A stretch of DNA of 64,000 nucleotides. It comes from Rhodosorus marinus CCMP1338. Taxonomy: Eukaryota > Plantae > Rhodophyta. The position numbers and the translations under genes are program-made. Position 1 is the first letter of the stretch, and every line of letters begins with the position of its first letter. Positions 1-31,303 of this stretch are shown piece after piece. Under the pieces are notes generated by a model. That model worked only from the letters and a program-made list of their open reading frames with translations, was not told the DNA's origin and searched no databases. Location of the stretch: contig JAMWBK010000010.1 of NCBI GenBank assembly GCA_029953675.1, positions 620,001 to 684,000 of the forward strand. The letters run 5' to 3'.

Positions 1-3000
1 CGGATTTACCAACCTGAACCATACGAGGCAGCCGCGGTGGCCATGATTCAGAGGATGCCAACCACACTCGCCGAAGGAAACTTCCACAGAGCGAGTATAA
101 ATTGTCGCTTACCGCCAGGCGATTGTCCTTTGGCTTCAAGTCTTTTGGTATGTACACACGAACAGCACTGATCCTCTCAAACATCTTCAAAGAGCACGGT
201 ATTACAGCCCACTCCCCTGCCTGCTTGGGTTCTCTAGGACGGACCCGCATTGAGGTTCCACCCAACGAGGTGGGGTCGCAGTTCAATAGTACGTCGACTA
301 TGTACCTTTCGCCATCGAACGTAAACGGACTTAGCTCAAATGCCGAAACCAGCAGCGGAGGGGAGGTCAATCAACACGAGTTTACATACCGATCTCCTTG
401 CCCAGAAGAGTTCTTGCTTGGCTTTGTTCTCTTCGTAAAGTTGATAATTACTCCCCACCCGTATTCTGACAGCGGCTCAAAGTCAGTAACCTTCACCAAT
501 CGACCTATCCAGTGCGGTTCGCATCAGCTACCCATCGAAAGCAAGAGCTATAATTTCCATCTTTGCCTACCTGGCTGCAGGAAAGGAACGATGTACTGGG
601 GTTTAAAAACATACGACCTTATCTCCTGGAAGAGCGAGTCCTTCTGTGACACCAAGCTAGTGTACTCGGAAATCTGCGTAGTCCCAACAAGAACGAATGA
701 TATACCGGCTTCAGAACAGTTTCAGTAAAACAAAAACCATGGGATTTAGCCCTCGCATATTCATAGAGGCATATTTGTGGCGTACGTCGTTCTCAAATCC
801 AGACAGATCAATTTTCGCTTTGGAATCTTCCAAGGACACGAGCTTCGCCTCCGCATCCGGAAGAGCTCTGTCAGCCTGGAACTGCGCGAACGACTTCGAA
901 ATTATGTATTGAGGGTCCGCCTCGTCTGCGCGGAGTAGATTCAGCAACATATTGTAGCCAAGATGGAAGGACGACTTCAACGGGTCGGTGTTTCCTAAAT
1001 CCAATGAAAACGTAAAGTAAGAAATGATGGTCTGCAACTGACCTGCGTTTTCGGTTCTGTTTGATGCTTACCTTTCAGAATCTTCTTTGCTTGTTCCGGT
1101 TCCATTTTTTCGTCGAACATAAGAATAGTGATACCTCTTTCGTCCAATCCACGACGACCCGCTCGACCACTCATTTGGATATACTCTCCTCCCGTAAGCC
1201 ATCGGAAAGATTCTCCGTCAAACTTTCTGGCGGCCACGAAAACAACGGTTTTTGCTGGCATATTCAGGCCCATTGAGAAAGTCTCAGTGGCAAACAGTGC
1301 TTTGATGAGACCTTCCCCGAACAAAATCTCCACGACCTAAGGCGAATGGTACGGAAATCAGTTTCTAATTCGATAATCGGAAAGACGAAATGCTCAGAAG
1401 CAAGAAATTCGTGCAACGCCTGGCCACGAACTATTGGGGAGAATTACGATATTCGAACATGACCCGAGGCGAGGCGCTCCGCGTAACCTCGGCCAGTGCC
1501 AGGCAATGTAGAAGGTGCGGCCGGACTGCCGTGCCAGTAACTCTCATTCTGGCTGGTGTAATTGCATCGCTGTCAGGCGGTCAAAAACCCGCGTTCGTGA
1601 CCAGCGTGCCATCTAGAACTAGTTTTCAATAGGACTGTTTGCCGTGCACTGCTCACCTCCTTCAGTATTGGTAACAGCCCAGAATGATGAATACCGATTC
1701 CTCGCTGAAGCAAGGGCAAGGCAGCGGTCAGCTGAGGCAGCCGTTGGTCTTCCTCCGACAGTGAATCAATCGCATGAGTGAAGACCTTCGCGAGAAAACA
1801 AGTTTAGAGTTCAAGAGAACCAGCTAATGTTAGCTTTGCCAATCGTACGCATCACGATCGTTTGGTTTTTGCAAACCTCTGCGATTAATCGTTTCTCTTC
1901 ATCATCAGTGAACTCTAGTTTCGACATCTGCAGAGCCAAACTCTCGCAATCTCGCCTCGAGAACGCGAAGACAATCACTGGATCGTAGTTTCTGTCACGA
2001 ATAAGCTTTACAACCTTGTACACATCCGATGACCCCTTCCTATTCTTCATCCTACTCTTCTTCGCAGCATCTGCATCGCCCTTCTCATTGGCCCCACCTT
2101 CAATTTGCGAAAGCGCTTTTGAAAAGTTCTCCTCCCTGAATCGACCTAGCAAACAGGCAATCAAGAAGTCGCCAATAAATTCAACGGTTTGCCGTGCTGC
2201 GATTCAGACGCATGGATCAATATCCAATGGGCATACCTTTTTCGTCCACAACGAAGTGCAGACCATCACCCCCGGCTGGAAACATGTAGTGTTGAAGAGG
2301 CACGGGTCTCATTGAAGTATAGATTGTATGGCAGGGCTCTTGCTTGATCTCAGCGATCCATTCCGAAAACTCCTGCGCGTTAGGAATTGTCGCCGACAAG
2401 AAGACGAACCTCACGTTTTTGGGTACCATGATGATTGCTTCCTCCCACACGACGCCTCTCTCTTTGTCTCTCATGTAGTGAACTTCGTCAAAGATGACCC
2501 ACGCGATCTCGCGAACTACTTCAGAGCCTCTGTAGAGCATGCTTCTGAGAATCTCGGTCGTCATTACCAGGCATGAACTGTTCGGGTTGATCGTGATGTC
2601 CCCCGTCATAAGCCCAACATCATCAAACTCTTCCTGGAGCTCTCGATACTTTTGGTTCGAAAGAGCTTTGATTGGCGATGTATAGATCACTCGTTGCTTG
2701 TTTCTTAGCGATTTTGCGATTGCGTACTCCGCAACGACAGTCTTTCCAGCTGAAGTATGCGCGGAGACGAGAACGGATTCTTCTCTCTCAATGCACTTGA
2801 CGGCTTCTGCCTGAAATGCGTCGAGCGTGAATTTGTACTTCTTCGCTGGGTCGGTGACTTTCATGTTTTCCAGGTCATCGAAGTCGTAACTGTCTTGGTC
2901 GCGACCAGAAGGCAACGACAAATCGTGCGTGCAGGTACTATTATTCTCGTACTCTGGAATCTTTAATCCATAAGACCTGGGTCTTTCTCTCGGCTTGAGG

Positions 3001-3230
3001 CTGTCATCACCGTTCTCATCAAGTTTGATAACTTTCTGTTCTTTCTCATCATCATCGTCGTCATCGATTTCCACAACCTCATCCAAATCATCGTGTTTTC
3101 TTTTTCTTTTTTCTTCAGCATCATCATCCTTAGCCAACCCGCTGCTCGCCTGCGCTGCCGTTTCCCCGGTTTCTACCCCGGTGTTTGTATCCGGGGTCTG
3201 ATCGAAAACATCAAAACTTTCTAAATCCAT
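1..3230 (-). CDS. MTR4: Ski2-like DExH RNA helicase MTR4/DOB1 (exosome/TRAMP cofactor); 3' part lies beyond the window start
   Basis: Motifs [55 protein letters not shown], and arch/KOW FLQPGRLV...YIVDVLL. Exons joined at GT-AG introns: 3230-2237, 2145-1877, 1785-1657, 1336-1072, 994-786, 673-571, 504-390, 305-113, then an intron from 112. Confidence 0.95.
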
Positions 3231-5142
3231 GTCGAATTACTCCCTTAGCGCAATGTCCATAGAAATTTTCTTCTACAAGGACACCTAGGATTCTGAATGT
3301 CCCACGTGCCCTACCAACAACCCAAGCTACCCCTTGCTGCAGGCTTTTTATCGCTTCCCAAAATGTCATTTAGCTTCAGTTCAACGACGATGACAAAGCC
3401 ACGCGGACGCGAGGGTCTTTTGACGCGCAAGAAAAAACCTGTCGAAGGAACTTTTTCCAGGGCGGAAGTTTTTTATTTGGGTTCTGAGAGGGCCTCACTA
3501 AGGCGGCCCCATTTTTTCAACGTGGACAGCGTTGGAACGAAAAGAAGCTGTGCTCGGATATCTGAAGAGAGGCTCAGTGCCTCTTCTCGCGATCGCCGCT
3601 TCAACCCAGCCATCTCAAACCTCTCGCAGGAGTTCAAAAGCGGATAGTAATCATAACTATCACTTATAACAGCAGTCTAGCTCTCTCATATACAACAAAG
3701 GAGAGTCTATGGTCTGCTTAGCTGGTCAGAAACGCCCTCTGGAAGATTGCTGGGCATCACGTCCGGAGCTCGAACCGAAGCCACCAGTTTGAGGACTCGG
3801 ATAGTCAATCAATATATAATTTTTGATTGATTTTCTATGGGTAAATTGTTTATTTCTGTACTATTCGTACTAAAATGGTTTTTCATTCGTCCTTAGAGCT
3901 TTTCTGACGCTTAGTACGGGCCGCCCTGAAAGTAGAAACCCGCTACGCTTTTTTTAGAAAAATGAATTTTTGTACATAAGAATTTTTTTTTGTTTGATGC
4001 GATGCAACAATAGGGAAACCGGAGAGGGGAGGGAGGGGGTGAGTTGTTGCCGTTAACAACTCCCGATCTACAGTGTTTCAACGTAGGGACCATAGGGGTC
4101 AAAAGTACCAACAAAAAGCGGGGTAATGTTTTGCGGCGACTTTTCTTCATAATATCGACCCAGACTGTTCTTGTCAAAAGTATCTAGGGGGTTATCACAG
4201 TCAAAGAATACTACAGGGGGACAATCGTTTTTGCAGTGGAAGGGGGGGGGGTGTAACCTCAACCAGTGCTTTTTGGTCTAAACTTTTTAAGTTTTTCCTG
4301 TACGGAAGAAGAGTTGCGAAAAGGTACATTTTAAAATAGCGTAATAATGAGCATAACAAAAACTCCAAAAAGGGCGAAAAAGAAAGATGAAATTTGTTTT
4401 AGAGGAAAATAATGTTTTAGTATTGGTAATTTTATGTATACATTTGGAGTAGGCGGAATGGAGGAGCGGACTGGAGGAAAGGCTGACTTTCTTGACATGA
4501 AGATGGGAAAACCAATATAGGAGAATTCCTTTTACACATTTTTAGTGACTCTGGTGAGGGGAAAGGGAGAGCCAACTAATGGGGGGGTGTGAAGGTTCTG
4601 AGGGGCTGACTTTCTTGAAGCGGATGAGAAAGCGATACAAGCGAATCTTCTTTCATCTTTAAGAGTGACTCGGTCCCTTTTTTTAGAAATATTGTCTTTT
4701 TGGACCTTGCTGGGCAGCCGTGTGAGGGGCGAGGGGCTTCGGAGAAAGAAGCCGCTCTTGAATTTGTTGACGGAGATTTGGTTTGTTTGGCCTCTTTTCT
4801 TTGGTTTTTTAGCTGTCCCGGGAGAATTTGTTTTTCCGAATGATTCGCACAAGTTGCTGAAGGTAGACGATCGGGCGCGAGTGCTTGACCGGCCTGGCGG
4901 CGGTCCGGTTTGACTTTGGAGGAAGTCCCCAGTCCGGGGTTTTGGGTTAGGTATGTGCGAGTGTGGACTAGTTGGGGTAGGGAAGGGTCGTCGTTTTGCT
5001 ATATAGTCGGGCGAGATGGGACCGGCAGCTATCTTTTAGTGGAGGAGGAGTAGTATTAGCGGAAAATTTTGGTACAGCTCGTTTGCTGGTTTAGACCGAG
5101 TCTGTCAGACAGTGACGATCGAGGCTTTCGCTGAAGTTAGCC

Positions 5143-6803
5143 ATGGATGGGGATAGCATCTTTCCGGATGCGCAGTCAGAGGAGTTTTACTTCAAGTACA
5201 TCGCCCTGCTCTTTCGCTTCTTCGGGACTTTGATATGCGCTACAATGATTTTGATGGGGTACTACTTGGTGAGCTGTAGGCGGCAGAGACTGACTGCAGA
5301 AGCGAAGCTTGGCGAAATTGAAAAAGAGAAACGGGAGTGGGATTCCAAGGGGAGGGAGCTCCTGCTCTCGTATACGAAACATAATAAGGATTTGGTACCT
5401 ACCAAACTCTCGAATCTGTCCGAGTCCAGCATGCCATTGGCGACTGCGGAAAGTTCGGCTTATATGGAGCAATTTGATTCTAGTGTTCTTGTTAAACCAG
5501 ACGAAGTTATAACTGTGGAGATGATTGGAAAGGGTGGCTTCGGAACCGTCTTCAAAGGAGTATGGCGGGGGACTCCAGTGGCGGTTAAGGTTATTTTTGT
5601 ACCTCAAGCCAACAAAAGCGCCCTATCAGGGATAATCAACGAAGCGGAAACTCTTTCTAGGTAAGGGATGGGGGTGGGATCTGGAGGACACGGGCGGGAG
5701 GCTGACTATATATATGCTGCCTGCGTTTTGATGAATAGGTTGCGACATCCAAATGTTGTGTTGTACATGGGAATCTCGTTTCTGGAGAACAAATCAATCA
5801 GCATAATCACCGAACTGATGGAACGAGGAAGTCTCTTCCACGTGCTCCATCAGGTTGAAACAGGGCCAGATGGCGTAGACCGGTACAAGACGGATCTGCC
5901 ACTTGGAAGGAGGATTCGATTTGCCCTGGAGGCCGCGAGGGGTCTAAACTACTTGCACAATTGTCGATATCCTGTAGTTCACAAAGATTTGAAATCGCTC
6001 AACCTGCTTGTGTCTTCTGACATGACGGTGAAGGTTGCTGATTTCGGCTTGTCTTCGATTGCGAGGGAGACGCTACTGAGCAGCCAATGTGGTGGAACTC
6101 CAGAATGGTAGGTGATTCTTAAACGATCCTTTTGTGCGTGGCCTGCGTTTTAAAGCGTCTAATGCAAACTTTTTCTTCGTCCAGGTCCGCCCCCGAAGTG
6201 CTGAGAAACGAAAAGCATGGACTACCATGCGACATATACTCCTTGGGGGTAGTGTTGTGGGAAATTATTACACGGGACGTACCGTTCAAAGGCATGAGCG
6301 GGGCGCAGATCATCTCGCACGTTGCTGTCAGCGGAGGTCGACTACCAAAGGCCGTTCCTGATTCCGAACTAGAGTTCGCTGGATGCGAAAAGTGCTTAGA
6401 GGACATGGACATGCTGATCCGGGAATGTACGGATCCTAGCCCGTCGAAGAGACCCACCTCCAGCGAGTTACTGAGCCGGCTTGAGCGACTGGGAGACGAA
6501 CTCACGAGCACAACTTCCCCATGCCACCCCGACGCTTGGAAGCAGACCGCAGGAGGGACTATGGAGGAAAGACGAAAGATCGCATCAGCGGACGGTCAGA
6601 ATCAGCAGTCAGCTGGACCTAAAAAGCACAGCGGAGCTGAATCAGAACCTGCGACTACCATTGAAGCTTCTGAAGAACTAATTCCTGCCAATGAGCCTGA
6701 CAAACCTGAAAAGGCCAAAATGTCCGGGCGCGCGAGGAGGGGGCTGGAGCCTCTTAGGTTACGACTATCCAAAATGAACGTTTCCGACCCGTCGAAGTAC
6801 TGA
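5143..6803 (+). CDS. TKL/Raf-like Ser/Thr protein kinase with an N-terminal transmembrane segment
   Basis: GKGGFGTV, VAVK, LRHPN, HKDLKSLN, DFG, GTPEWSAPE, DIYSLG. Exons 5143-5660, 5739-6107, 6185-6803. Hydrophobic IALLFRFFGTLICATMILMGYYLV followed by RRQR. Confidence 0.9.
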
Positions 6804-7585: not shown

Positions 7586-7944
7586 TAATAGCCTTATAAC
7601 CTTATTTTGCTTAATGTTGTTTTGCTTAGGATATTTCTGATCCATTCGTTTCGATGGATTGTGGGTGCATTCGGAGCTGGCGGTGGTTGGGGAGGAGTGG
7701 ATGAGATTGGTACACTGAAATTTGTCAGAGGCGAATACCGAAGGCTGGGTTGGGGGAGTAGAGAAGCAGAAGAGACAGAAATTTTTGGCAGTCATTGAGA
7801 GTTTTTCTCTTCGTGGAGGGATCTTTGTGTTTGCCGAATTGGCGTTGGAGCCTCAGGTGTTTGAGGGAGGGTGTCTTCCTGGTCCTGGTTACTGGGGAGA
7901 AGAACTGGTCTGGTCCTGTGTAGAGCGTCGCAGATAATTTCAGA

Positions 7945-10319
7945 ATGCTGGACGGTGAATGCTCGTTCGTGAGTCCGGCGTCGTGGTGCAATCGTCATTC
8001 AGCGGGTGTGGGGCATGTTCACGGTTGGTGGTTTTTTTTTCTGCTGAGGCGTGATGCCCGGTGATTTGGTTTTTGTAGGAATAGGATAGACTGATCGTTC
8101 GATTCGGGTTTCTTTATTGGTTTCTTAATCTGACTGTAGGGGCGCGACCGGGAGTTCCGCTGCATATTCGGCGAACCTCGGCAAGTCGTCTTGGTGCTAG
8201 CACATCGGAAGCGTACACAAAAGGATTCTTTTCCGTAGAAGAGGATGAGTCGTCATACGAGATCGCGGTTGATTCTGAGAACGTGTATGGACGTGTTCCT
8301 GAGGACCTGAATGGCACTTTGTTCAGAGTCATGCCCGGAAAAGTAGACTCTCACGGGGATGCACTGAAGAGCTACTACGATGGGGACGGCATGGTTAGCT
8401 CAGACTTCTGGATGAAGATCTACAAATTTTATCCAAGCTGGAAGGGCTCAGACCAGTTGCGCTTCCGTTTCTTGTGCTCTGATCGTTAGGTTGTCGGGAT
8501 CAGTTTTGGTGAGGACGCAGTGTTTGTTCGACATCGATGCATAAGAACGAAAGCATACGACAGAGAAAAGAGGAGGAAGAAGCGATTGTACAGAGGACTC
8601 TACGGTTCGGTGCTTCCCGGAGGAAACCTTGCCAATTTTGCTGTCAAGGTAGGTGGATAAGTACTGTGCGTCAAATTTTTTATCTCCGTTTTCCCGAGCT
8701 CGGCGTTTTACAGACGATGATGCCTTTAGGTGAACGCCTTGGGCGATTTTCCCGCCCTTCCTGCGACCGACAATACCGCCGTATCGGAAGTATCGCGACT
8801 CATGTTCTTGACCAGTGGGGATCAAGGATCCCACGGGGACGGACGATCAGATCTATAGATGCTATGAATGGGTCTTTAGTTTACTGACTACGAGCTCGGG
8901 TTCTCTGCGCCCGTCTCTGAAACCGCAGATTAAGCAAACTGCGAATAGATTTGGTGTGAACTACGGTGGTCGACTACTTGCGCTCAATGACTGGGGGCTT
9001 CCATATTCTGTTGATCCCGCAAGCCTTTTGACCCGTGGCAATACTAACTTGAGAACTGAACTGGACGACGGGGACAAGATGATACCTTCGTCGAGAATTT
9101 GCAAGGACAATCTCATTCTGGCATCGAAAAGTTTTACTCCCTTCGGGGTAAGCTTAGGCCGTAACCTGCAACTGAAAAAATCCGCTGGCTCAGCCATCTC
9201 ATGTGCATGCATCAGATGAGCGTCCGATTCACAGAGTTCAAAGGAGACTACAGACTTGTAGGGAGCCAGAGCGCCGCCTTAACGAGTTTTCTCACTCAAG
9301 ATTTTGCTGTGACAGAGAAGTACTTCGTCATAGTACAGCCAGCTCTAAGTCTCGACTTAAACTCACTAGTCCTCGGGTCGAAGAAAACTTATCAGGAGGC
9401 ACTTTCTCCGAAGGGCAAAACCTCGCAGATCGTTGTGGTCGATCGGAAATCTGGAGCCTCAAAGGTTGGTTGCTTTTACCAGAGTTGCATGGTTCCATTT
9501 TCGATGTCTGAATAAGGCGAACTGTCGCTTCCACGCAAAGAAAATTGATCTTCAAGATACCAACTCCGTAATCGGACGCATCGCCAACGCCTACGACGAA
9601 GTTGAGGGAAATGTTACTATAGACGCTATCAGTCACGAGAGAGTGTTCTTTGGAGATGGATTAACGAGTAATGACTACGCAAACGACGTGCCACGCTCGA
9701 AACTAGTTCGGTAGGCAGAACCAAACTCTGGACCTGAGGACTCGTAGACGAGAACCGTAAGACACGAAATCTGATACTCTACGCGAACAGAATCCGCGTT
9801 GATGTGCAGGCGAAAACTTCCGACTTGACAGTACTTAGCGACTATCATTGTGACTACCCCGTTGTAGACTCCAGTGATGGCCGGATGCACAAACATATCT
9901 ACTCTCTTTCAAACAATGAGGCGAAAATATCTCCGCCGAGAGGGATTATGAAGACAAATCCGAAAGAAAAGGTAAGAACTCAGGTTTCCTGTATTTTGGA
10001 TGGGCTTCTAGAGCTTGCTAGTCAAGAGGCCTGACATCACTTCACCAATGATGTTCACCAGACGAACGAAGTGTGGGTTCCAGAAAGTCCTTCGCAATAT
10101 TGCTCGGCACCCGCCTTCGCTCCAAGAGAAGGCGCTACTGATAGCACTGCAGGGTACATCGTGACTGTAGTATTTGATTCGGAGACCGAACAGTCATCCG
10201 TCGCAATTTTGGACTCTGAAGCATTCACAGATGGTCCTGTTTGCTGGATCAGATTGGAGTCTCCAGTACCACATGGTGTATGTTCTTCTTGGTCAAACTC
10301 GGTCTACTCGTACGTATAA
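7945..10319 (+). CDS. Carotenoid cleavage dioxygenase (CCD/RPE65 fold) homolog, probably plastid-targeted and catalytically inactive
   Basis: Family motifs GRVPEDLNGTLFR, YDGDGMV, GLPYSVDP, DFAVTEKY, ANAYDE, PAFAPR, GYIVTVV, AILD, GPVCWIRL. Exons 7945-8023, 8140-8393, 8490-8648, 8929-9147, 9216-9464, 9541-9710, 9791-9971, 10062-10319. N-terminus MLDGECSFVSPAS resembles a red algal transit peptide. Confidence 0.85.
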
Positions 10320-11199
10320 GCCAAGATACCGGAAAAGTCGCCAGTTCTCACTCCACGAAGACGGATGCTAATTGTCGTGCACCTTTTCGTCGCAGGATCA
10401 AAGACGCGAAGAAGACGAACAGCTTTGAGATATTCAAGGACAAGGGATGGAACACTGTTGATAGCGGGTTCTCTATGATAGGAATGCAGGGATTCGAGGA
10501 CGAATTCTAGGTGCCCATAGCGTCTACGCGCGTCATTTAGCTGTTGTCGTGTAATTTCGTGTCCTGGGAGCTCGACTTTATAGGCGGATCTTAAGCTTTT
10601 TGTGAGGATCATGGTTTTTGTCTCTACCGAGCCTCTATTTGCATAGCAAAGGATTCACAAGGCCAGTAGGGGAACGTTTAATCTACTGCCGATCCGCACC
10701 TTGTAAGTGCAGAATGGGAGCCTAGAGCTTTTGAATGCAGTTAAGACCTGTTCGTCGGCTACTCCGAACGGACTGCTTACCGGTGACTGAATAGCTGTGT
10801 TTATGCCTGATAGAGAGGCTGGATCTATGCGAATCCGAATCCCGCGGTTGTTGTCGAGGATCCAGTTTTTGTCGCGGTGTCTAGTCAGCCAAAGGTGGTG
10901 GTGTGTGGGGGTGGCTTGCTAACAGATCATGTCTGAATGATATGATCTGAATTAGTTTTGGAAATGCCTCTACCAACATGAAGGTCGGTGACCTCGATGG
11001 AATTCATTTTAGATTGTGATAAAACAGTACATTAAAGTTAAGCTCGCATTTTTCCGCAGTTTTCGTGAAAGTTGGGTGTGAGCCACAAGCTGCGTCCACG
11101 GACGGCTGGGGACGGTATGGACAAAAAACTAGTGGCCACAGAGTTCGAGGGAGTTCACTAACTCTCTCGAGGTCCCTTCCGTTTTCTCGAGCTATGCTT

Positions 11200-17567: not shown

Positions 17568-19119
17568 ATGGGTGACGGCATGGCGCAGCCTCAGGTGATA
17601 ACGCGATCCCAAATGCTATCTGTTTTAGTTGCTGGAATTGCCACGGTGATGATATTCTCCGATCAGAATCTGATGGCACCGAATTTGACGATGATCGCAA
17701 CGGATTTCGGCCTGGACGCAAGTGGGCGGGATTGGTTGCTTGGTGGAATGCTCTCGACGTTGTTTTTTCTAGTCGGTGCTCCCGCGTCGATCGTCGCGGG
17801 AGTGCTTGCTGATACGCGGAGGCGGGTGCCTCTGCTCAGTGCTTTTATGTTGGTGGGCGCGATACCGTGCGTTCTCACTATGTTCGTTCAAAATTACTAC
17901 CAGCTGCTGGCGACGAGAATGTTCACTGGCATGGCGATCGGGGGTGTGATACCCATCATCTTCTCGTACCTTGGGGACATATTCCCGAACAACTTGAGAA
18001 ACTACGTTTCTGGAGGGTTTGGGTTTGTCTCCGGGGCAGGGCAGGCATTGGGCCAGTTTCTTGCGGGTGCAACGGGCGAATCCTTAGGATGGCGATTCTG
18101 CTTCCCCGCGATAGGCATACCATCGATTCTAGTTGCTCTGGTAAAGTACCTAAACATCTGCCGACTAAGGACCACTCGAGTGGCTTACCAGTCGGTTTTT
18201 TTCTCGTGCAGGGTGCGTTGCTCGTATGCGAGGAGCCTAAACGGGGTGCAGCAGATGGACAGCAAAAGTTTGGCACTGGATTCAGTTGGGACTCGGTTGT
18301 GAACATTCTTCGAATAAGGTCCAATGTGCTGATTTTTCTCCAAGCCGGTTTCGGTTGCGTCCCATGGGGTATCATCACTGCGTACCTCAACGACTACTTG
18401 GCACAAGAAGGTGGACTGGAGGTTCTCAATGCTACGTACGTCATTATGTTATTCAGCATTGGAGCAGCTCTTGGTGGAGTCTTTGGATCTGTTACTGGAC
18501 AATACCTCCAGAACAAAAATCGAGCTCTGCTCGGAATTTTTATGGGGGCTACCACCATCTTATCCATTCCACCGATCCTGGGTCTGGTCCTTATCCCCGA
18601 TGGCAAGAAGTACCTAGCCATCTTCTTTGTCCTTGCTATCGTTGGCGGATTCCTGGCAAGCCCAACTGGTGCCAACGTTCCTGCCATTGTCATTAACTCA
18701 AACACCCCGGAAACACGAGGAAGTGCGCTCGCTCTCTTCAATATGTGTAACGATGTAGGGAAAGGACTAGGACCCTTGATCGGCGCCGCCTTGATTGGAG
18801 GTAAGTTGCATACCACCGAAAAAGAGTTACTCGCAACACCAGACCTCTCTGGACTTGTGGTGTTTGCAGTCGTTGTCCACGTCACGCTTGGCGGCTCTTT
18901 GTGACTGACGAAAGCGGTTGTGTATCCCTCTTGAAAAATTGCTCAGCGTTTGGACGACGGATCGCCCTGACAATCGCGATCACTTCCTGGTTTCCATGTG
19001 GCGTGCTGTGCTTGTTGCTGGCAATAACTTACCCTGGTGATGAGGACAACATGAAGGAGCGAATCAAAACTACTCCTGATGAGGAGAACGCGGAGCTACT
19101 GGGCGTCGTAGAAGAATGA
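17568..19119 (+). CDS. Major facilitator superfamily transporter, Spinster-related (paralog 1)
   Basis: DQNLMAPNL, GVLADTRRR (motif A), GDIFP, RGSALALFN; about 12 TM segments. Exons 17568-18140, 18212-18800, 18947-19119. Confidence 0.9.
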
Positions 19120-21505
19120 TAGCACCAACAAAATGCAGTTTCGCATAGAGGCGTGTGCTTGGTGAGTTTGGCCGGTAGCCCCTAAACAGAAATACAAACA
19201 CCGTGGGGGCTTGACCACTGTTGAAACTATTGAAGGGAGGACTAGTGTCGGTTGCTGGGAGGGGAATATGGGTTGTGGACCACTGTCGGATGATTCCGGC
19301 TATCTTGCTGATCTACCAGAGTTCCAATCTAGAGTAGGCTCAGAACTCTATTGTGTTCTTCTTCAGCGCTTTGGGACGTGGTCACCAATGCCAGAGTTGT
19401 GTGGTTGCCGCGATGAATGGATTTATTCGTGGACTATGGGTTGAGCTTGGTTTGGGGATGGCGGAGGATTCACTGTATCATGGTAGACATGGAAGTCATA
19501 GATATATATGTATATAGAAGTATGTATTTATACATACACGTTTTGTGTTTATGTATGTATGTGTGTATTGCTAGAAAAAAATGGGATAAACTTATGCAAC
19601 TGTCTTAAGCGGGACTAGCTTGCAAATGGACAGCACTGAACAGCAGAAAGTTTGAGCCTGGGGAGGAGTGTCCAGATCCGATTCATGACCTGATGATGTT
19701 AAAACGTTTCACTTCAAAATACGCATGACCGTTTGGTGCTGGCAGATTTATCTGGAAGCATTCTCGATATGGGAAGACAATTGGCCAGACCAGCACCCGT
19801 CGACATTACCTAAGACCGAAACAAAATGGTGAGTAGGAAGAACTCTTCCTTTCTTTGCTGGCGCGTTTGCTGCTGGTCCGTTGGAAAGACCCCTAAATCC
19901 AGGAGCGGATAGGAGGTGCAGGAAGTTGTTGGACTCCCAATTCTGTTTCCTACTTCATCGACCAAGAATTTCCCAGCATTCTTGCTAGCATCAACATGCG
20001 ACGGAGCATGGCAAACAGAGTCGGGCAGCTTTCCCGACCGACTCACTGCTCTTTTTCCATCTACAGTTTCCTGGCAAGTCTCAAAACCATGTCGAGGCGC
20101 TCGGGCAACAAGAAAAGGAACAAACAGTATCATTACAGCAGCATCGCTGCTGGGGATGGATCCTGCTGTCGACCTTGGGACCCTAGTTTGTCAGTTTAAC
20201 CTCGCGAATAATCGGCTGAGGTTAGTACACATGAACACAGAGGGGATGCACGCGTCCGTCTTCCACCTGCTAGCGCCATGTGCAGATATGTTTCGAAAAA
20301 GAAGGCCTGCTTCCATTCTCAGCAATCCCGGCTCGAGGCGGTGTGTGGTCGTCGAGAAGCCTTCCGTCAACGTTTTCCGAATGGCGAAGCAGAGGTACTG
20401 TTCCACTCACGTACATTGGTGATTCGAACTTCACTGTCGTCTTCCTTCTCGGGAGGGTTGCAAGACTTCCAGCAGATGAGCTGCAGAGGACAATGCTCAA
20501 CAGCTAAAAAAGATGGCGTATGACTATCTACAGGTGGGCCAAGCTTAAAAAAAAGCACTCTGGTAAAACCCTAATCTACCTTTGCAGAACAGAACAATGC
20601 CGAGACGTCACAGCCGCTCCGGAGCGGCGATACTACGCAGCACAAGTCGCCCAAAGCCGTCGTGAACTACAGAAAGCACAGGCTGCGAAGAACTTGTTTT
20701 CGCCACTCAACGAAAACGGAGGGAAACCCTTTCACTCGAAGATAAGCTGCGCTCTTCTAGCTGCCCTTGTCAGCAAAAACCGAAGAATTGGACTCCAAAA
20801 TAGAAAACGACCCGACAAACGAAAATACTAAATTTAGAAACTGGAGAAGTTGCGTTTTTGGCGGAGTGTTTCGTCTTCTTCGTCAGGTTGTTTTGAGATG
20901 CCGTTTCTGAAAACAAACCAAAAGTTCAAAAAAAAACACAAATTGCTTATTCTGAGGGGTTGTCTCCTTCTAGGTCAACAACAACACTGCTCGTCTTCGT
21001 CGTCACGACGTTTTGCAGAGGTCGTGGTGTTTGTCCTGCGTGTGAAGTTGTAGCTTTTGGTGGGTGGGTGAGGGAGTGGGGTGAGTTGACCAGATTTCTA
21101 AATATTCAAAGGCTTCTTCTTCGTTGCGTTTTTTGGTTTTTTTTTATTTTGTTTTTTAGTCCCTTTGCGTTTTTCTTTGGTACAGTGTGGACGTCTGCAG
21201 TGGTCTTCCCCACTGTTGCCGAGGTTCCCATGCTCCGGCACATGGTTGTTTTGTTGCGCAAGAATATAGGATATAGCTTGTGATGAAATCAGGGAACAAA
21301 ACTTGCAAGAAGAGGCAGCGAGTTTGGTGAGGACCGAGGTAGAGGCAAGGAGCTTGGCTCTGCGTACGAGCAGACTGGTGTTCTTCTTCAAGGAATTTTT
21401 GCGAGGAAGAGTAGCGGGGTGGGGCTGTGGGGTCAAATCTGAAGTGGTTTCGTGTTTAGTGTGGAAAGTAGTTCCACTCGTTTCCCCGCTCCAAGTTTTG
21501 AGGGA

Positions 21506-23096
21506 ATGTACAATGAAATTGTTTACGCGTCCGATGAAGAATCGATAGAGTTTGAGCCGTCAGAGGCTGAAGGATATGGGGGCGTTGGCGGTCCATCCAA
21601 GTGGCGAATGTGGGCTACGTCAGCGCTGCTGGCGTTGCTTACTTTCTTTGTGTTTTCTGATCAGAGCATTGTTGCACCCAACCTGACAGCCATTGCTCGA
21701 GAGTTTGGGATGACTGATCAAGAACGCGACTGGAAACTTGGAGGGATCCTGTCCATGCTCTTCTTCATTGTCGGCGGACCTGCGTCTCTTCTCGCAGGAT
21801 ATCTCGCGGATACCGTTGGTAGGCGGATTCTTCTCATTATGGTCTTCACGGCGATGGGCGGCGTGCCTTGTGTGTGCACATTTTTCGTCAAAAATTTTGC
21901 GCAGATACTGGCTACGAGGACCTTTGCTGGTTTCTCCATGGGAGGAGCTCTGCCGATTCTCTTCTCCCTCCTTGGTGACCTCTTCCCCAGCTCACATAGA
22001 ACGTACGTCGGTGGCGCGTTCGCCCTAGTCTCTAGTACAGGACAAGGAGTGGGGCTCTTCATCGCTGGCATCACTGGGGCCAAACTTGGATGGAGATATG
22101 TTTTCCTTTTTGTTGGGATCCCAATGATTGTTGTCGCAATTGTAGGAGTTGCCCAGCCCTGCAATCTTCACTCAAGAACGAAACGGTCGTTTGTAAATTT
22201 CTGACTCTCTCGATCGGAAAATGTAGGCTACGTGGTTGTTAGTTCCTGAGCCTGAGAAAGGAGCCGCCGATGGTCGCGGACCGAGTCGAGCTGAACCGGA
22301 GGACAGAGGAAGAAGTAGAGCCCCGATGTTATCAATTTTCCGAGTTTTAACAAACAACTTGATCTATTTGCAGGCTACTTTTGGGTGTCTCCCGTGGGGC
22401 GTCATGTTCGCTTTCATGACCGACTACCTGGCGCAGGATGTAGGTCTCGGGGTTGTGAAAGCAACGACTGTCGCTACATCGTTTAGCGTTGGATATGCCA
22501 TTGGCGTCCTCTTGAACAGCATTATTGGGCAGAAACTCCAGAACTGGAAACCGAGCCTCATGGGGTTGATGATTGGGTCATCGTCAATCGTTGGGATTTT
22601 CCCCACTGTGTTCATCATCTATTCGGATGCGGCAAAAATACCGATGTGGATTCTCCAAGCCCTGGCCTGTGTCGGAGGATGCATCCTAAGTGCGCCGGGC
22701 TCCATCCTTCCCTCCATTCTAATCAACGCCAACAAGCCATCAACTAGAGGATCCGCAGCTGCAGCCTACAACCTTTTCAATGACGTCGGAAAAGGGTTGG
22801 GGCCGATCTTCGGCTCGTTACTAATCGAACGTAAGCGCTCCCTATTCCTCACCATCCTGCAGAAGATTCACAGTGTTCTGATCATCGCGCCACCCGAACA
22901 CCTGTGGATGTTCCTCTGCTTCTTCACGCTGCCTCCTACAGTCACAGGTTCTAGACGATCTGCGCTTATTTTGTCCTTCTCAGCGTGGTTACCTTGTGGT
23001 CTGATACTCCTTGGACTCATGTACTCGTACCCACGCGACTTGGAGACGGCCAAAGTGGAGAAGGTAGCAACTGAACTGCGTGATCACGGAACATAA
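21506..23096 (+). CDS. Major facilitator superfamily transporter, Spinster-related (paralog 2)
   Basis: DQSIVAPNL, GYLADTVGRR, GDLFP, RGSAAAAYNLFNDVGKGLGP. Exons 21506-22141, 22227-22830, 22942-23096; intron positions equivalent to paralog 1. Confidence 0.9.
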
Positions 23097-28157: not shown

Positions 28158-31100
28158 TCACAATTCCTCCGTCCAGATGCTCTCGTCATCCAACAGGGCT
28201 TTGGCTTTGTCGTCAACATCCTGCGCTTGGTCTACCGATGGTGTAGTTGGATCGCCCTTTCTTCTCACAGAGTCGATTCCCTCCATGCCCCGTAGGGACT
28301 CCAGCACTAGCGTGAGTGCATCGATATCTTCAATCAAGAATTCGTAGGCGAGCGTCGCGTACCCAGTCGCATAGCTTGATGACGCGGATTTGACAATCGG
28401 TTTTCCTAGTTCGGTTATGCAACTCGACACTGCCGCAAGCAGGCCAACACTATCCTTTGCCTCAATCACAGCTTGAACGGGGCACAGATCTATGTCGTCC
28501 GTATTGTTCCAGTCAAAGTCTTCTACGAGAGCTGAGCCTCCTGCTTCCAACTAGCAAAATTAACGCAACGGTAAACAGTGAGCTCTGAAATGTCAAAAAA
28601 AATTGGGCGCGATTCAGAAAGAACGCAACTTTCTAGTTAACCTCACCTTGTCCAAGCCCGAACAATGCGCTCTGTGGATGGTCAACGAATTGGGGCTGTG
28701 AACACTTCGCAACGCCTTGACTTTGTCCCCACGAACGGGCCGGCAACACGTAGCCAAGGAAGGGACGACTTCCTCATCGTCGAGATCCGCGGGAGCTTCA
28801 GTCTCTTGCAACCCGTTGTCAGTCCAGGTCGGTGACTCTGAACTATCCCGAAACACTTTAGCCCTTCGATCCCTCAGCAGATCGAGCACCACGGGCTCAA
28901 GCTCTGTATCACCACCGTCGATAACAGCGAAACTCGATAAGGCAACGTAAAGATCTTCCACGTTTCGAAGGGGTTTGCCGTTTACAGTGCTCTGAATGGA
29001 CGGAAGGATCTCGCGAATACCGGCATCCGATGGAACGGGTTCCAGCCTCGTCCGAGCGGCTTCTTTCAGAATACGCCTACCAGCCTCCATCTGCGAGCCC
29101 CGTTCCTTCTCGCGGAGCAGCTTCCTGATCTTTGATCGGGCAGTCCGGGTCTTCGCGAAGTCAAGCCAATCCAGCGACGGACCAGGCGCCGAAGGATCTG
29201 TCATAATTTCGACCAAGTCAGCGTTTTGGAGCTTGTGGTCCAGCCCAACGGTCCTTCCATTAACATGGGAACCTATCATTCTATGTCCAACCTCAGAATG
29301 TATTCTATACGCAACATCCACAGGTGTTGAATCCTTGGGCAGATCTATGATGCGACCTTTCGGAGTAAAGATATGCACCCGATTGCCAAGGAGGTCGTAG
29401 CGCACGGCGTCTACCAAGTCTCTCGAAGAATCTGAGAACTCGTGACAGTATTCTCGTATAGACCTGAGCCACAAAGTAATCCTCTGACGCCAATTTCTAT
29501 CCGACACTACCCCGCCAGACTCTGGATCAGAGGAGAATACGTCAACCGCAATACCTTCCTCGGCAATCTTGTGCATTGACTTGGTTCGGATGTGTATGTC
29601 CAACGGCACAAATCGAGTATTCGGTCCGTGTAATACTGTTGTATGCAACGATTGATACCCGTTTGGCTTTGGGAACGCGATATAATCCTTCATGCGTCCT
29701 GGAAGCGGCTGCCACAGCTCGTGAATCCTTCCCAGCACATGATAGCAAGCGTTCTTCTCGAAAGCAGACTGTTTCGACTTGTCCTCGTCATCCATCTGTA
29801 CCCCGATCACCACGACTAGTGTCGAGAGGTCGAGCATGGTTGGGAGAGCCTCGCCTCTTCGAATCTTCTGGTATATCGAATAGAGCGGCTTCATTGTCCT
29901 GATTACCTCCAGGGAGTTGACTCGTGGAGACACATTCTTCGGAATCAAAAAGTCGTCGTTCGTGAGCAGCTCGGACAAGGTCTCCTGGGCCTCCTGGAGG
30001 TAGTACTCGTGATTCGAGCGTCGGTAAAGAGATTCCACATCCTTTCGAAGCTTTTCATACTCCTCCGGATAAAGATACTTAAACGACAGTTCCTCCTAAT
30101 GTTGTCGAATCGAACACGGGAGTGAGACTCAAGAACAATCAGCTTGAAGTTCAATCAACACTGATTGCACTAGCAAACTAGAAAAGGGTCTTTCTTACCA
30201 ATTCACTTTTGATTCGGCGCATGCCCAATCGGTGGGCAAGGGGCGCGAAAAAGTCCAAAGTTTCCGCAGCGATCTTCTTCTGCTTCTCAGGTTTCATAAA
30301 CTGCAGCGTCCGCATGTTGTGAAGCCTATCTGCTAGCTTAACAATGATGACTCGTACATCTTCTGTCATTGCCAAGAACATGTTTCTTAAGTATTCAGCC
30401 TGCTTGTCGACCTCCTCCTCCTTCTTCCCCCCAACAAGAGCCCCCATCTCCATTGGAGTAAGGACGTGCACGTTCTTTCCGAAAACTTTCTCATCCTGAT
30501 CTGCGACTACTGTGGGCTGGGTACTGGTCTGCACACTTTTGTGAACTTTGCTCGCCAGCTTCGAAAACTTTGTTTCACCCTCGACTATCTTTCGCACGTC
30601 GGTACCAAATAGGCTCTATTGAAAAAGGCAAGCACAATGAGCAAAACACATGAGCACTTTCTCTCCACTCCTATACAATGACGCAAGAGACTAGGCACCG
30701 TATCCGAAAACCCGCCGCAGAAAAGCCTGGACTTCCGCCGCGCCTTCACGCTATGTTTGCCCGAAGCGAGAAGCGGATGGACGTGATTCCTCTTTCGTGA
30801 TTTCGAATCCTTACCTCGAGCTCATCCAAAGTAACTGGAGTGTCCTCCACTGTGTCGTGTAAAAGCCCGGCAACTAGCGTATCACGGTCAAGTCTTAGCT
30901 CGGCCAAAATCACTGCAACTGCTACTGGGTGAATAATAAATGGCTCGCCGCTTTTCCTTAGCTGGCCCTCGTGGGCAATATCCGCCAAAGTCAGTGCCTT
31001 GAGAATTCGCTCTCTGCATTGTGGTCGCAAGTATCCAATCCTCGGGTGAAGATCATCCATATACCTCAAAATTGCAGAATCGGAGGCGGTAATTCGCCCG

Positions 31101-31303
31101 TTGTCCCCGTTGACCTTGACATTCATGGACGTGATGCTGCCCCCTGCAATCTCCGCACCGGATTCCAGCAGGGACTCGTTCCCTAGACACATCACGGCGG
31201 TGTCTCCTGTTCTTGGACGCCATCGCTTCTCGGCATCATACCAAGTTTTTTGCCTTCTCCACCATTCCGAAGACCAGTGACAAACAAAGCCCGCACTATT
31301 CAT
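28158..31303 (-). CDS. RSH: Long-form RelA/SpoT homolog (HD-SYN-TGS-ZFD-ACT), plastid-targeted
   Basis: [58 protein letters not shown]...[22 protein letters not shown]...[18 protein letters not shown]. Exons 31303-30815, 30615-30199, 30095-28647, 28550-28158. Confidence 0.95.

What the first reader, a model, noticed from the sequence alone, without database searches (positions are those of the whole stretch)
7945..10319. CCD/RPE65-fold pseudoenzyme: all four Fe-ligand histidines appear replaced
Known: carotenoid cleavage oxygenases need a four-His Fe(II) centre (motifs xAHP, HDFxxT, FHxxNAxE, PxGxHG) plus second-shell glutamates. Seen in the spliced protein: the corresponding positions read IPSSR, TQDFAVTE, GRIANAYDE and PHGVCSSW (H to S, Q, R, C). 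The EFP and SEP glutamate motifs read DYP and SAP, and HWFDGDG reads SYYDGDG. The eight-exon frame is intact with a transit-peptide-like start, so it looks like a maintained gene. Inference: an iron-free beta-propeller acting as a carotenoid/apocarotenoid binding, scaffold or regulatory protein in the plastid. This is the best candidate for undescribed biology in the window.
Basis: partly seen in the sequence, partly recalled or inferred. Interest (0 to 1): 0.75.

Follow-up and report, generated by a model that had tools for sequence, protein, structure and literature searches.

The report
Iron-free carotenoid oxygenase relative, red alga
A red alga (Rhodosorus marinus) keeps and expresses a gene for a carotenoid-cleaving-enzyme look-alike that has lost every residue needed to hold its catalytic iron, and similar "dead" copies with the same conserved C-terminal tail occur in other red algae, a dinoflagellate and stramenopile algae, pointing to an undescribed non-catalytic role.

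Summary
The gene is R. marinus NDN08_003915, annotated "hypothetical protein". It encodes a 557-aa RPE65/CCD-fold protein (Pfam E=3e-69; AF2 model against Synechocystis ACO, TM 0.89).

The four Fe-ligand histidines read S218, Q265, R333 and C511. The three second-shell glutamates read D185, D398 and A453. In a 63-sequence alignment, 59, 59, 59 and 58 of the 59 other sequences have His in these columns.

There are nine exons, and the CDS ends at 10510, not 10319. The missed last exon encodes a conserved tail.

The gene is maintained. It is transcribed in two other Rhodosorus strains and in Bangiopsis (48% identity, S/Q/R/T). Core dN/dS is 0.21, against 0.66 in the presequence.

It belongs to a subfamily derived from cyanobacterial ACO and marked by a C-terminal tail (helix plus WN..S.FS..G). 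Some members keep all four His (Galdieria, Cyanidiococcus, Porphyridium purpureum, Pinguiococcus). Many have lost them in different combinations (Rhodochaete, P. aerugineum, Polarella, Chattonella, Chrysoparadoxa, Tribonema).

The propeller's structural motifs and the tail stay conserved, but no new shared active-site residues appear. My best reading is a non-oxygenase protein, probably plastid-located, acting by ligand binding and/or tail-mediated docking. That function is inferred, not shown. I found no description of it in the literature searched.

The parts
7859..10909 (+). Approximate transcript span (5' UTR, nine exons, 3' UTR)
   Evidence: The transcript contig L001 from another Rhodosorus strain aligns to 7859-8023 and onward to 10396-10909 in nine blocks.
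7945..8023 (+). CDS exon 1 (start codon; presequence)
   Evidence: The model translates exactly to P0001. Donor is GTTGGT.
8140..8393 (+). CDS exon 2. It holds the end of the presequence, the start of the propeller and SYYDGDG. The S104 codon (8370-8372) replaces the conserved His of HxFDGDG.
8490..8648 (+). CDS exon 3
8929..9147 (+). CDS exon 4. Key codons: R171 at 8947-8949 (ACO T136 position), D185 at 8989-8991 (ACO E150), S218 at 9088-9090 (ACO H183).
9216..9464 (+). CDS exon 5. Q265 codon at 9297-9299 (ACO H238).
9541..9710 (+). CDS exon 6. R333 codon at 9577-9579 (ACO H304).
9791..9971 (+). CDS exon 7. D398 codon at 9852-9854 (ACO E370).
10062..10309 (+). CDS exon 8. A453 codon at 10107-10109 (ACO E426) and C511 codon at 10281-10283 (ACO H484). 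The exon ends at donor GTACGT (10310).
10396..10510 (+). It encodes the C-terminal tail ...KKTNSFEIFKDKGWNTVDSGFSMIGMQGFEDEF and the stop codon. The invariant W538-N539 codons are at 10448-10453 and S543 at 10463-10465.
   Evidence: It is in phase with exon 8, present in P0001 and in the related transcript. The tail motif is conserved in 25 representatives.
7945..8201 (+). Presequence, residues 1-47 (interrupted by intron 1). Putative plastid transit peptide.
   Evidence: pLDDT is below 50 for residues 1-45. The segment is absent from cyanobacterial homologues. dN/dS for residues 1-54 is 0.66 against 0.21 in the core. The motifs CSFVSPA (Rhodosorus) and MTAFV (Bangiopsis) are present.
8223..10295 (+). 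RPE65/CCD seven-bladed propeller domain, residues about 55-515 (with introns)
   Evidence: Pfam PF03055 E=3e-69. AF2 pTM 0.85. Foldseek TM 0.89 to ACO.
8649..8928 (+). Intron 3, unusually long at 280 nt. It contains an open stretch (8730-8855) that is not an exon.
   Evidence: It is absent from the related transcript and from P0001.

Best explanation
The gene encodes a catalytically dead descendant of the cyanobacterium-derived ACO-type apocarotenoid oxygenase, probably targeted to the plastid.

What it keeps: the seven-bladed propeller and its structural signature motifs.

What it has lost: the entire Fe(II) centre. All four His ligands are replaced, none of the three second-shell Glu remains, and the His of HxFDGDG is gone. 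It therefore cannot carry out iron-dependent alkene cleavage or RPE65-type isomerohydrolase chemistry. Two arginines (R333 at the H304 position, R171 at the T136 position next to the iron) and two aspartates (D185, D398) now sit where the metal site was. I infer that salt bridges fill the old site.

The protein is under purifying selection and is expressed. It carries a C-terminal extension, an amphipathic helix followed by an invariant WN..S.FS..G motif. This extension defines a subfamily of red-lineage algae that holds both His-intact and His-depleted members. Within this subfamily the iron site has been lost in different lineages and in different residue combinations, while the tail is invariant.

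I infer from this that the subfamily has a catalysis-independent activity that depends on the propeller plus the tail. The Rhodosorus protein would work only in that mode, as a non-catalytic binder of a (apo)carotenoid-like ligand and/or a docking or regulatory subunit that engages a partner through the tail.

Shown: the fold, the loss of ligands, selection, expression, and the distribution of the subfamily. Inferred: plastid location, Arg/Asp filling of the old site, ligand binding, and tail-mediated docking.
For: - Fold and family: Pfam RPE65 E=3e-69. Best PDB sequence hit is ACO at E about 1e-44. AF2 pLDDT 83.5, pTM 0.85. Foldseek TM 0.89, rmsd 2.6 A to ACO.
- Ligand loss: residue-level pairing; column counts. 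Only two mature-region His are conserved.
- Only Fe(II) supports ACO activity, and metal-free ACO is soluble and structurally intact (PMC6060882). An iron-free propeller is therefore viable but not an oxygenase.
- Maintenance: the ORF is intact and of identical length in three Rhodosorus strains, and a Bangiopsis orthologue exists; all of these come from transcriptomes. Core dN/dS is 0.21 (Fisher p=5e-16), tail 0.19, presequence 0.66.
- Subfamily: the profile search found about 24 His-depleted representatives among the top 150, and nearly all full-length ones carry the tail. Taxa are given.
- Parallel decay: every one of the four His positions is still retained in some depleted lineage. The Porphyridium group contains both HHHH and THHG members (77% bootstrap).
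- Selective decay: 30 of 71 columns conserved in live CCDs are kept in the dead set, and these are the structural motifs. Losses cluster at the metal ligands and their flanks. The only residues shared specifically by the dead set are D284 and the tail W538/N539/S543/F545/S546/G549.
Against: - No direct evidence exists for ligand binding, a partner protein, localisation or metal content.
- I could not inspect the AF2 coordinates, so the Arg-Asp filling of the site and the persistence of a tunnel are unverified.
- The tail's WN motif lies in a low-confidence region (pLDDT about 45), so its structural role is unknown.
- S, Q, R, D, D and A are all conserved between Rhodosorus and Bangiopsis at 48% overall identity. 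This could also mean a lineage-specific new active site.
- The tail was part of the search profile, so the association between dead members and the tail in the top 150 is biased by ascertainment.
- The deep phylogeny is unresolved, so the number of independent losses is uncertain.
- I could not establish whether Rhodosorus also has a His-intact paralogue.
Confidence: 0.6

Rival explanations
1. Neofunctionalised enzyme. The old metal pocket, now Ser/Gln/Arg/Cys plus two Asp, catalyses a metal-independent reaction on a carotenoid-like substrate, such as isomerisation, hydration or lyase chemistry, or uses a different cofactor.
For: S218, Q265, R333, D185, D398, A453 and R171 are identical in Rhodosorus and Bangiopsis despite 48% overall identity. 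Arg at the H304 position recurs in Rhodochaete, P0145 and P0152. The DDA plus R171 signature recurs in Chrysoparadoxa and Tribonema. The pocket-flanking D266 (HDF motif) and N336 (NAxE motif) are retained in 94% and 88% of dead members.
Against: Across the dead lineages the four former ligand positions are highly variable (S/R/I/K/T/F; Q/R/P/A/G/T/D/S/Y; R/E/G/S/Q; C/T/Y/L/Q/R/G/S/A). No residue specific to the dead set is shared in the core apart from D284. Six of seven identical sites against a 48% background is only marginal (about p=0.05 by a simple binomial, my calculation), and buried positions are conserved anyway.
Confidence: 0.15
2. The propeller has become a pure protein-protein or membrane scaffold unrelated to carotenoids. 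The tail and the propeller surface are what matter, and the tunnel is irrelevant.
For: The tail W-N-S motif is the most conserved feature of the dead set, invariant in 16 of 16. The structural propeller motifs are kept while the pocket decays. The tail resembles no solved structure, and its distal part, including the WN motif, is predicted disordered, like a short linear docking motif.
Against: Pocket-flanking motifs (xDF, NAxE, FDGDG) are still conserved. His-intact members with the same tail exist, which ties the tail to carotenoid-enzyme biology.
Confidence: 0.2
3. A decaying or neutrally evolving gene: an expressed pseudogene on its way out.
For: The catalytic site is lost. Dead members are more diverged from cyanobacterial ACO-like proteins (26-31% identity) than live tail-bearers are (34-39%).
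Against: The 557-codon frame is intact in three strains. A Bangiopsis orthologue exists at 48% identity with the same length and tail. Core dN/dS is 0.21 with p=5e-16, three times lower than in the presequence. Splice sites are conserved and transcripts exist.
Confidence: 0.03
4. An artefact of gene modelling or alignment: the histidines are really there, in another frame, exon or register.
Against: The corrected model equals the deposited protein and is confirmed by an independent transcript. HMMER, two MAFFT alignments and the Foldseek match all agree. The mature protein has only seven His in total.
Confidence: 0.01

Closest known systems
Synechocystis apocarotenoid-15,15'-oxygenase (ACO/Diox1; PDB 2BIW, 4OU9, 5KJB)
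   Same: Same seven-bladed propeller (TM 0.89, rmsd 2.6 A). It is the best sequence match among solved structures (E about 1e-44, about 26% identity). They share the FDGDG, xDF, NAxE and PRxxxxxEDDG-type motifs.
   Different: ACO has the 4-His Fe(II) centre with three Glu behind it; this protein has S/Q/R/C and D/D/A. ACO has neither the N-terminal presequence nor the C-terminal tail.
His-intact, tail-bearing red-lineage homologues: Porphyridium purpureum 'Apocarotenoid-15,15'-oxygenase' KAA8491528 (P0140), Galdieria partita GJQ15716 (P0131), Cyanidiococcus KAF6003322 (P0141), Pinguiococcus (P0147)
   Same: Same subfamily, with the N-terminal extension and the same C-terminal helix plus WN..S.FS..G tail. 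P0140's nearest relatives are cyanobacterial ACO-type proteins at 37-38% identity.
   Different: They keep HHHH and the Glu/Asp shell, so they are presumably active oxygenases (none has been characterised, as far as I found). They are less diverged from the cyanobacterial enzymes (34-39% against 27%).
His-depleted, tail-bearing homologues: Bangiopsis (SQRT), Rhodochaete (RRRC), Porphyridium aerugineum (THHG), Polarella glacialis (TAER), Chattonella (FDSS), Chrysoparadoxa (-PSA), Tribonema minus 'carotenoid oxygenase' (RSGG)
   Same: Same fold, same tail and the same kind of loss. Chrysoparadoxa and Tribonema share the D/D/A shell and the Arg at the T136 position.
   Different: The replacement residues differ, and some retain one or two His. 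The databases name them 'hypothetical', 'unnamed' or, misleadingly, 'carotenoid oxygenase'.
RPE65 (vertebrate retinoid isomerohydrolase)
   Same: A CCD-fold protein that does not act as an oxygenase and was long regarded as a retinoid-binding protein (my knowledge). It shares Pfam family PF03055.
   Different: RPE65 keeps the 4-His iron centre and needs it for catalysis. Sequence similarity to it is weak (E=6e-8 over the N-terminal part only).
Presumptive CCD genes of Phycomyces blakesleeanus that lack the expected histidines
   Same: Precedent that CCD homologues without the His ligands exist in genomes (review PMC5133782).
   Different: They are fungal, mentioned only in passing, with no conserved tail, no distribution and no evidence of selection reported. 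Their relation to this subfamily was not tested.

Membership tests
Carotenoid cleavage oxygenase / RPE65 superfamily (Pfam PF03055) | Significant match to the family profile over the whole domain | tested here: met
   E=3e-69, 234.7 bits against a cutoff of 27; profile positions 15-468 of 469.
Carotenoid cleavage oxygenase / RPE65 superfamily (Pfam PF03055) | Seven-bladed beta-propeller fold | tested here: met
   AF2 pTM 0.85, pLDDT 83.5. Foldseek TM 0.89 and prob 1.00 to ACO, and matches to CAO1, LSD, NOV1 and NinaB.
Catalytically competent CCO (oxygenase or RPE65-type isomerohydrolase) | Four conserved His ligands of Fe(II) | tested here: not met
   S218, Q265, R333 and C511 at the ligand columns, against 58-59 of 59 His in the other sequences.
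Catalytically competent CCO (oxygenase or RPE65-type isomerohydrolase) | Second-shell glutamates (ACO E150, E370, E426) | tested here: not met
   They read D185, D398 and A453. Asp at the E370 position also occurs in His-intact members, but Ala at the E426 position does not.
Catalytically competent CCO (oxygenase or RPE65-type isomerohydrolase) | Bound Fe(II) and cleavage or isomerase activity | not testable with these tools
   This needs metal analysis and enzyme assays. The literature shows that only Fe(II) supports ACO activity (PMC6060882).
ACO-type (cyanobacterium-derived) branch of the CCOs | Closest characterised relative is cyanobacterial ACO rather than plant NCED/CCD1/4/7/8, animal BCO/RPE65 or stilbene oxygenases | tested here: met
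   ACO is the best PDB hit by about 20 orders of magnitude in E-value and the best structural hit. The closest His-intact non-clade hits (P0006-P0008, 28-30% identity) resemble cyanobacterial ACO-type proteins. The His-intact subfamily member P0140 is 37-38% identical to cyanobacterial proteins.
Tail-bearing red-lineage ACO-like subfamily (defined here) | C-terminal extension after the last propeller strand: basic amphipathic helix followed by W-N-x3-S-x-F-S-x2-G | tested here: met
   The tail reads FEIFKDKGWNTVDSGFSMIG. W and N are in register in all 25 tail-bearing representatives.
Nuclear-encoded plastid protein of a red alga | Cleavable N-terminal transit peptide (Ser/Thr/Arg-rich, few acidic residues, Phe near the N-terminus) | tested here: inconclusive
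   There are about 47 extra, disordered residues. Residues 1-54 have 11 Ser/Thr, 6 Arg/Lys and 3 acidic residues, with the motifs CSFVSPA (Rhodosorus) and MTAFV (Bangiopsis), read directly from the sequence. dN/dS is relaxed. No targeting predictor or localisation data were available.

The most novel reading that the evidence does not exclude
Red-lineage plastids (red algae and the dinoflagellate and ochrophyte lineages that inherited red plastids) harbour an old, conserved family of iron-free CCD-fold proteins. Its real function is catalysis-independent and runs through the invariant C-terminal WN..S.FS..G tail, for example as an apocarotenoid or carotenoid sensor or carrier, or as a regulatory subunit docking onto a conserved plastid partner. 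The His-intact relatives would be moonlighting ancestors whose oxygenase activity has been discarded in several lineages.
Probability: 0.4. Interest if true: 0.75.

Novelty: new variant of a known kind. Interest (0 to 1): 0.62.

Why it matters
CCD/RPE65 proteins are treated as obligate 4-His iron enzymes, and genome annotation labels all of them "carotenoid oxygenase". This shows a selected, expressed, taxonomically broad branch in which the iron centre is gone but the propeller and a lineage-specific tail are conserved.

- It flags systematic mis-annotation. Tribonema's protein is named "carotenoid oxygenase", and P. purpureum's "Apocarotenoid-15,15'-oxygenase" sits next to a degenerate orthologue or paralogue in P. 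aerugineum.
- It offers a natural experiment on what a CCD propeller can do without metal.
- It points to an unknown tail-binding partner in red-type plastids. That could bear on carotenoid or apocarotenoid handling or signalling in algae, including ecologically dominant groups.

The loss of the site in different lineages and different combinations suggests a second function already present in the active enzymes.

Tried and rejected
1. A possible extra exon at 8730-8855, an open frame flanked by AG. I rejected it because it is absent from P0001 and from the related transcript.
2. My first guess for the exon 1 donor (7972/7973). I replaced it with 8023/8024 after comparison with P0001.
3. A word-indexed homologue search with a 16-sequence profile (A4). 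It returned only 9 hits and no new named members.
4. A scan of metagenome contigs with P0001. It gave 117 pattern matches but no tblastn-confirmed relative.
5. The tail profile (A5) against PDB sequences. It gave only spurious low-complexity hits.
6. Ten literature searches for His-less, dead or pseudoenzyme CCDs in algae. No description of this family turned up. The only relevant remark was on Phycomyces CCD-like genes lacking His.
7. NJ phylogeny to count loss events. Shallow groups are robust, but deep nodes have 5-38% bootstrap, so I do not claim a number of independent losses from the tree. The argument for parallel decay rests on the retained-His patterns instead.
8. Genomic neighbourhood (helicase, kinase, MFS transporters). 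It gives no functional hint.
9. Whether Rhodosorus has a His-intact paralogue. Neither nor one search recovered one, but both searches are limited by the word index, so this stays open.
Full report
**The sequence and the gene model**

The region is eukaryotic and carries short GT-AG introns. I assembled a spliced CDS by eye and then corrected it against database proteins.

The final model has nine exons: 7945-8023, 8140-8393, 8490-8648, 8929-9147, 9216-9464, 9541-9710, 9791-9971, 10062-10309 and 10396-10510. It translates to 557 aa. The translation is identical to the deposited protein "hypothetical protein NDN08_003915 [Rhodosorus marinus]" (P0001).

An intron-less transcript contig from another Rhodosorus strain (L001, MMETSP0315) aligns to the window in exactly these nine blocks plus UTRs, roughly 7859-10909.

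That stop is reached only by reading through the GTACGT donor at 10310. The true last exon (10396-10510) adds a 42-residue tail.

**Checking the observation**

- The protein matches Pfam RPE65 (PF03055) at E=3e-69 over the whole profile.
- Its best solved relative is Synechocystis ACO, at E about 1e-44.
- In that HMMER alignment, ACO H183, H238, H304 and H484 pair with S218, Q265, R333 and C511.
- The second-shell E150, E370 and E426 pair with D185, D398 and A453.
- ACO T136, which lies next to the iron (my knowledge), pairs with R171.
- In a 63-sequence MAFFT alignment, the 59 sequences outside the clade have His at these four columns in 59, 59, 59 and 58 cases. The conserved His of HxFDGDG (His in 60 of the 63 aligned sequences) is S104 here.
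- The AF2 model is confident (pLDDT 83.5, pTM 0.85; it is low only for residues 1-45 and 532-557). It superposes on ACO with TM 0.89 and rmsd 2.6 A.
- The mature region has only seven His, and only H352 and H410 are conserved across the three Rhodosorus strains and Bangiopsis. No substitute 4-His site exists.

**Is the gene maintained?**

- Orthologues of identical length come from two other R. marinus transcriptomes (MMETSP0315 and MMETSP0011; 85-88% identity).
- A 561-aa orthologue comes from Bangiopsis sp. CCMP1999 (48% identity). It reads S/Q/R/T at the His columns and D/D/A at the Glu columns, and it has the same tail.
- Nei-Gojobori dN/dS between the window CDS and L001 is 0.25 overall. 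By region it is 0.21 in the propeller core, 0.19 in the tail and 0.66 in the first 54 codons.
- The excess of synonymous change in the core is highly significant (Fisher p=5e-16).

The gene is therefore expressed and under purifying selection. It is not a decaying pseudogene.

**The wider family**

A profile of the four clade members was searched against 1.84 billion representatives and gave 7187 hits. Among the best 150:

- 126 have HHHH at the four ligand columns.
- About 24 lack two or more ligand His.
- All the full-length depleted sequences, and a handful of HHHH ones, carry the same C-terminal extension: a basic amphipathic helix followed by W-N-x3-S-x-F-S-x2-G.

His-intact tail-bearers with a named source:

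| Organism | Pattern |
|---|---|
| Galdieria partita | HHHH |
| Cyanidiococcus | HHHH |
| Porphyridium purpureum | HHHH |
| Pinguiococcus | HHHH |

His-depleted tail-bearers with a named source:

| Organism | Pattern |
|---|---|
| Rhodochaete | RRRC |
| Porphyridium aerugineum | THHG |
| Polarella glacialis | TAER |
| Chattonella | FDSS |
| Chrysoparadoxa | -PSA |
| Tribonema minus | RSGG |

The P. purpureum member is 37-38% identical to cyanobacterial ACO-type proteins. This fits an origin from cyanobacterial ACO-type enzymes; endosymbiotic transfer is my inference. The tail resembles nothing in the PDB.

**The pattern of decay**

- For each of the four His positions, some depleted lineage still retains it: H1 in P0145; H2 in P0153, P0137 and P0221; H3 in P0153 and P0137; H4 in P0162 and P0173. 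No single His loss is therefore shared by all, and the centre decayed in parallel.
- A bootstrapped NJ tree supports Rhodosorus plus Bangiopsis (100%). It also supports a Porphyridium group containing both HHHH and THHG members (77%). Deep nodes are unresolved.
- Depleted members are more diverged from the cyanobacterial proteins (26-31% identity) than live tail-bearers are (34-39%).
- Of 71 columns that are at least 85% conserved in live CCDs, 30 are kept in 16 dead sequences. These include P80, G85, T86, D109, G110, R127, T131, N170, P189, D266, R314, N336, G468 and P507.
- The losses cluster at the ligands and their flanks: positions 104, 171, 185, 217-219, 265, 330-333, 399-400, 453 and 510-512.
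- The only residues shared specifically by the dead set are D284 and the tail W538, N539, S543, F545, S546 and G549.

There is thus no family-wide new catalytic constellation, while the tail is the most conserved element.

**How it most likely works**

The literature shows that only Fe(II) supports ACO activity, and that metal-free ACO is soluble and structurally intact (PMC6060882). A propeller with none of the ligands therefore cannot do CCO or RPE65 chemistry, but it can fold.

I infer that R171 and R333 with D185 and D398 fill the former metal site. I could not measure this because the model coordinates are not exposed.

The presequence of about 47 residues is disordered, rich in Ser/Thr/Arg and fast-evolving. 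It carries a Phe motif of the red-algal type (CSFVSPA in Rhodosorus, MTAFV in Bangiopsis). I infer that it is a plastid transit peptide.

The combination of parallel loss of catalysis, a retained propeller scaffold and an invariant tail argues that the subfamily has a catalysis-independent activity. The Rhodosorus protein would perform only that activity. The most plausible forms are binding of a lipophilic (apo)carotenoid-like ligand in the old tunnel, docking to a conserved partner or membrane through the tail, or both. I give this 0.6.

**Rivals**

| Rival | Confidence | Comment |
|---|---|---|
| Lineage-specific new enzyme chemistry in the remodelled pocket | 0.15 | S/Q/R and D/D/A are conserved between Rhodosorus and Bangiopsis, and DDA plus R171 recurs in two ochrophytes |
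| Scaffold unrelated to carotenoids | 0.2 | |
| Neutral decay | 0.03 | |
| Artefact | 0.01 | |

**Context and novelty**

The neighbouring genes are a DEAD/DEAH helicase, a protein kinase and two MFS transporters. They give no functional hint.

Ten literature searches found no description of this subfamily or of algal His-less CCDs. The only precedent is a passing remark that two Phycomyces CCD-like genes lack the expected histidines (PMC5133782).

I rate it a new variant of a known kind: a conserved pseudoenzyme branch of the CCD family with a novel C-terminal motif. I score interest at 0.62. Pseudoenzymes are common in general. However, a selected, apparently plastid-targeted, multi-phylum dead CCD with a conserved docking-like tail is unexpected for this family and can be tested directly.

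**Limits**

- I have no coordinates, no localisation predictor and no ML phylogeny.
- The tail was part of the search profile, so there is ascertainment bias in the top 150.
- dN/dS rests on one pairwise comparison.
- The presence of a His-intact paralogue in Rhodosorus is unresolved.

Noticed in passing
window 8649-8928: Intron 3 is 280 nt, two to four times longer than the gene's other introns (68-116 nt). It contains an open frame (8730-8855) preceded by an AG that mimics an exon, but this stretch is absent from the related strain's transcript.
   Followed up: yes
P0140 vs P0153/P0284 (Porphyridium purpureum vs P. aerugineum): Two congeneric red algae carry tail-bearing homologues that group together (77% bootstrap). 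One is HHHH and annotated 'Apocarotenoid-15,15'-oxygenase'. The other reads THHG with a D/G/P shell. This is either a recent loss of the iron site or an unsampled paralogue pair.
   Followed up: partly
P0338 (Tribonema minus) and P0187 (Chrysoparadoxa australica): These ochrophyte proteins share with Rhodosorus the D/D/A second shell and the Arg at the ACO T136 position. This hints at an old dead paralogue inherited with the red plastid. The Tribonema protein is named 'carotenoid oxygenase' in NCBI although it reads RSGG at the ligand positions.
   Followed up: partly
P0292 (metaclust, 1258 aa): A protein whose precomputed Pfam domains combine VHS (PF00790), GAT (PF03127) and RPE65 (PF03055). 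This is an unusual fusion of trafficking-adaptor domains with a CCD propeller.
   Followed up: no
window 17568-18904 and 21452-22204 (+): Two MFS_1 transporter paralogues lie in tandem on the + strand, with similar N-terminal sequences (…FSDQ..MAPNLT.IA.(D/E)FG…).
   Followed up: partly
window 995-3230 (-) and 5143-6803 (+): Upstream neighbours are a DEAD/DEAH-box helicase (Ski2/Mtr4-like by its motifs) on the minus strand and a membrane-anchored Ser/Thr/Tyr-type protein kinase on the plus strand. Both are split by introns.
   Followed up: partly
window 4001-6000 and 30001-32000: There are strong local GC-skew excursions (+0.27 and -0.29 in 2-kb windows) against a background near 0.
   Followed up: no
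window 10281-10283, 9297-9299, 9577-9579: Q265 (CAA) and R333 (CGC) are one nucleotide step from a His codon. C511 (TGT) is two steps away, via Tyr or Arg, and both of those residues are seen at this position in other depleted lineages (HRRY, RHHY, TAER).
   Followed up: no
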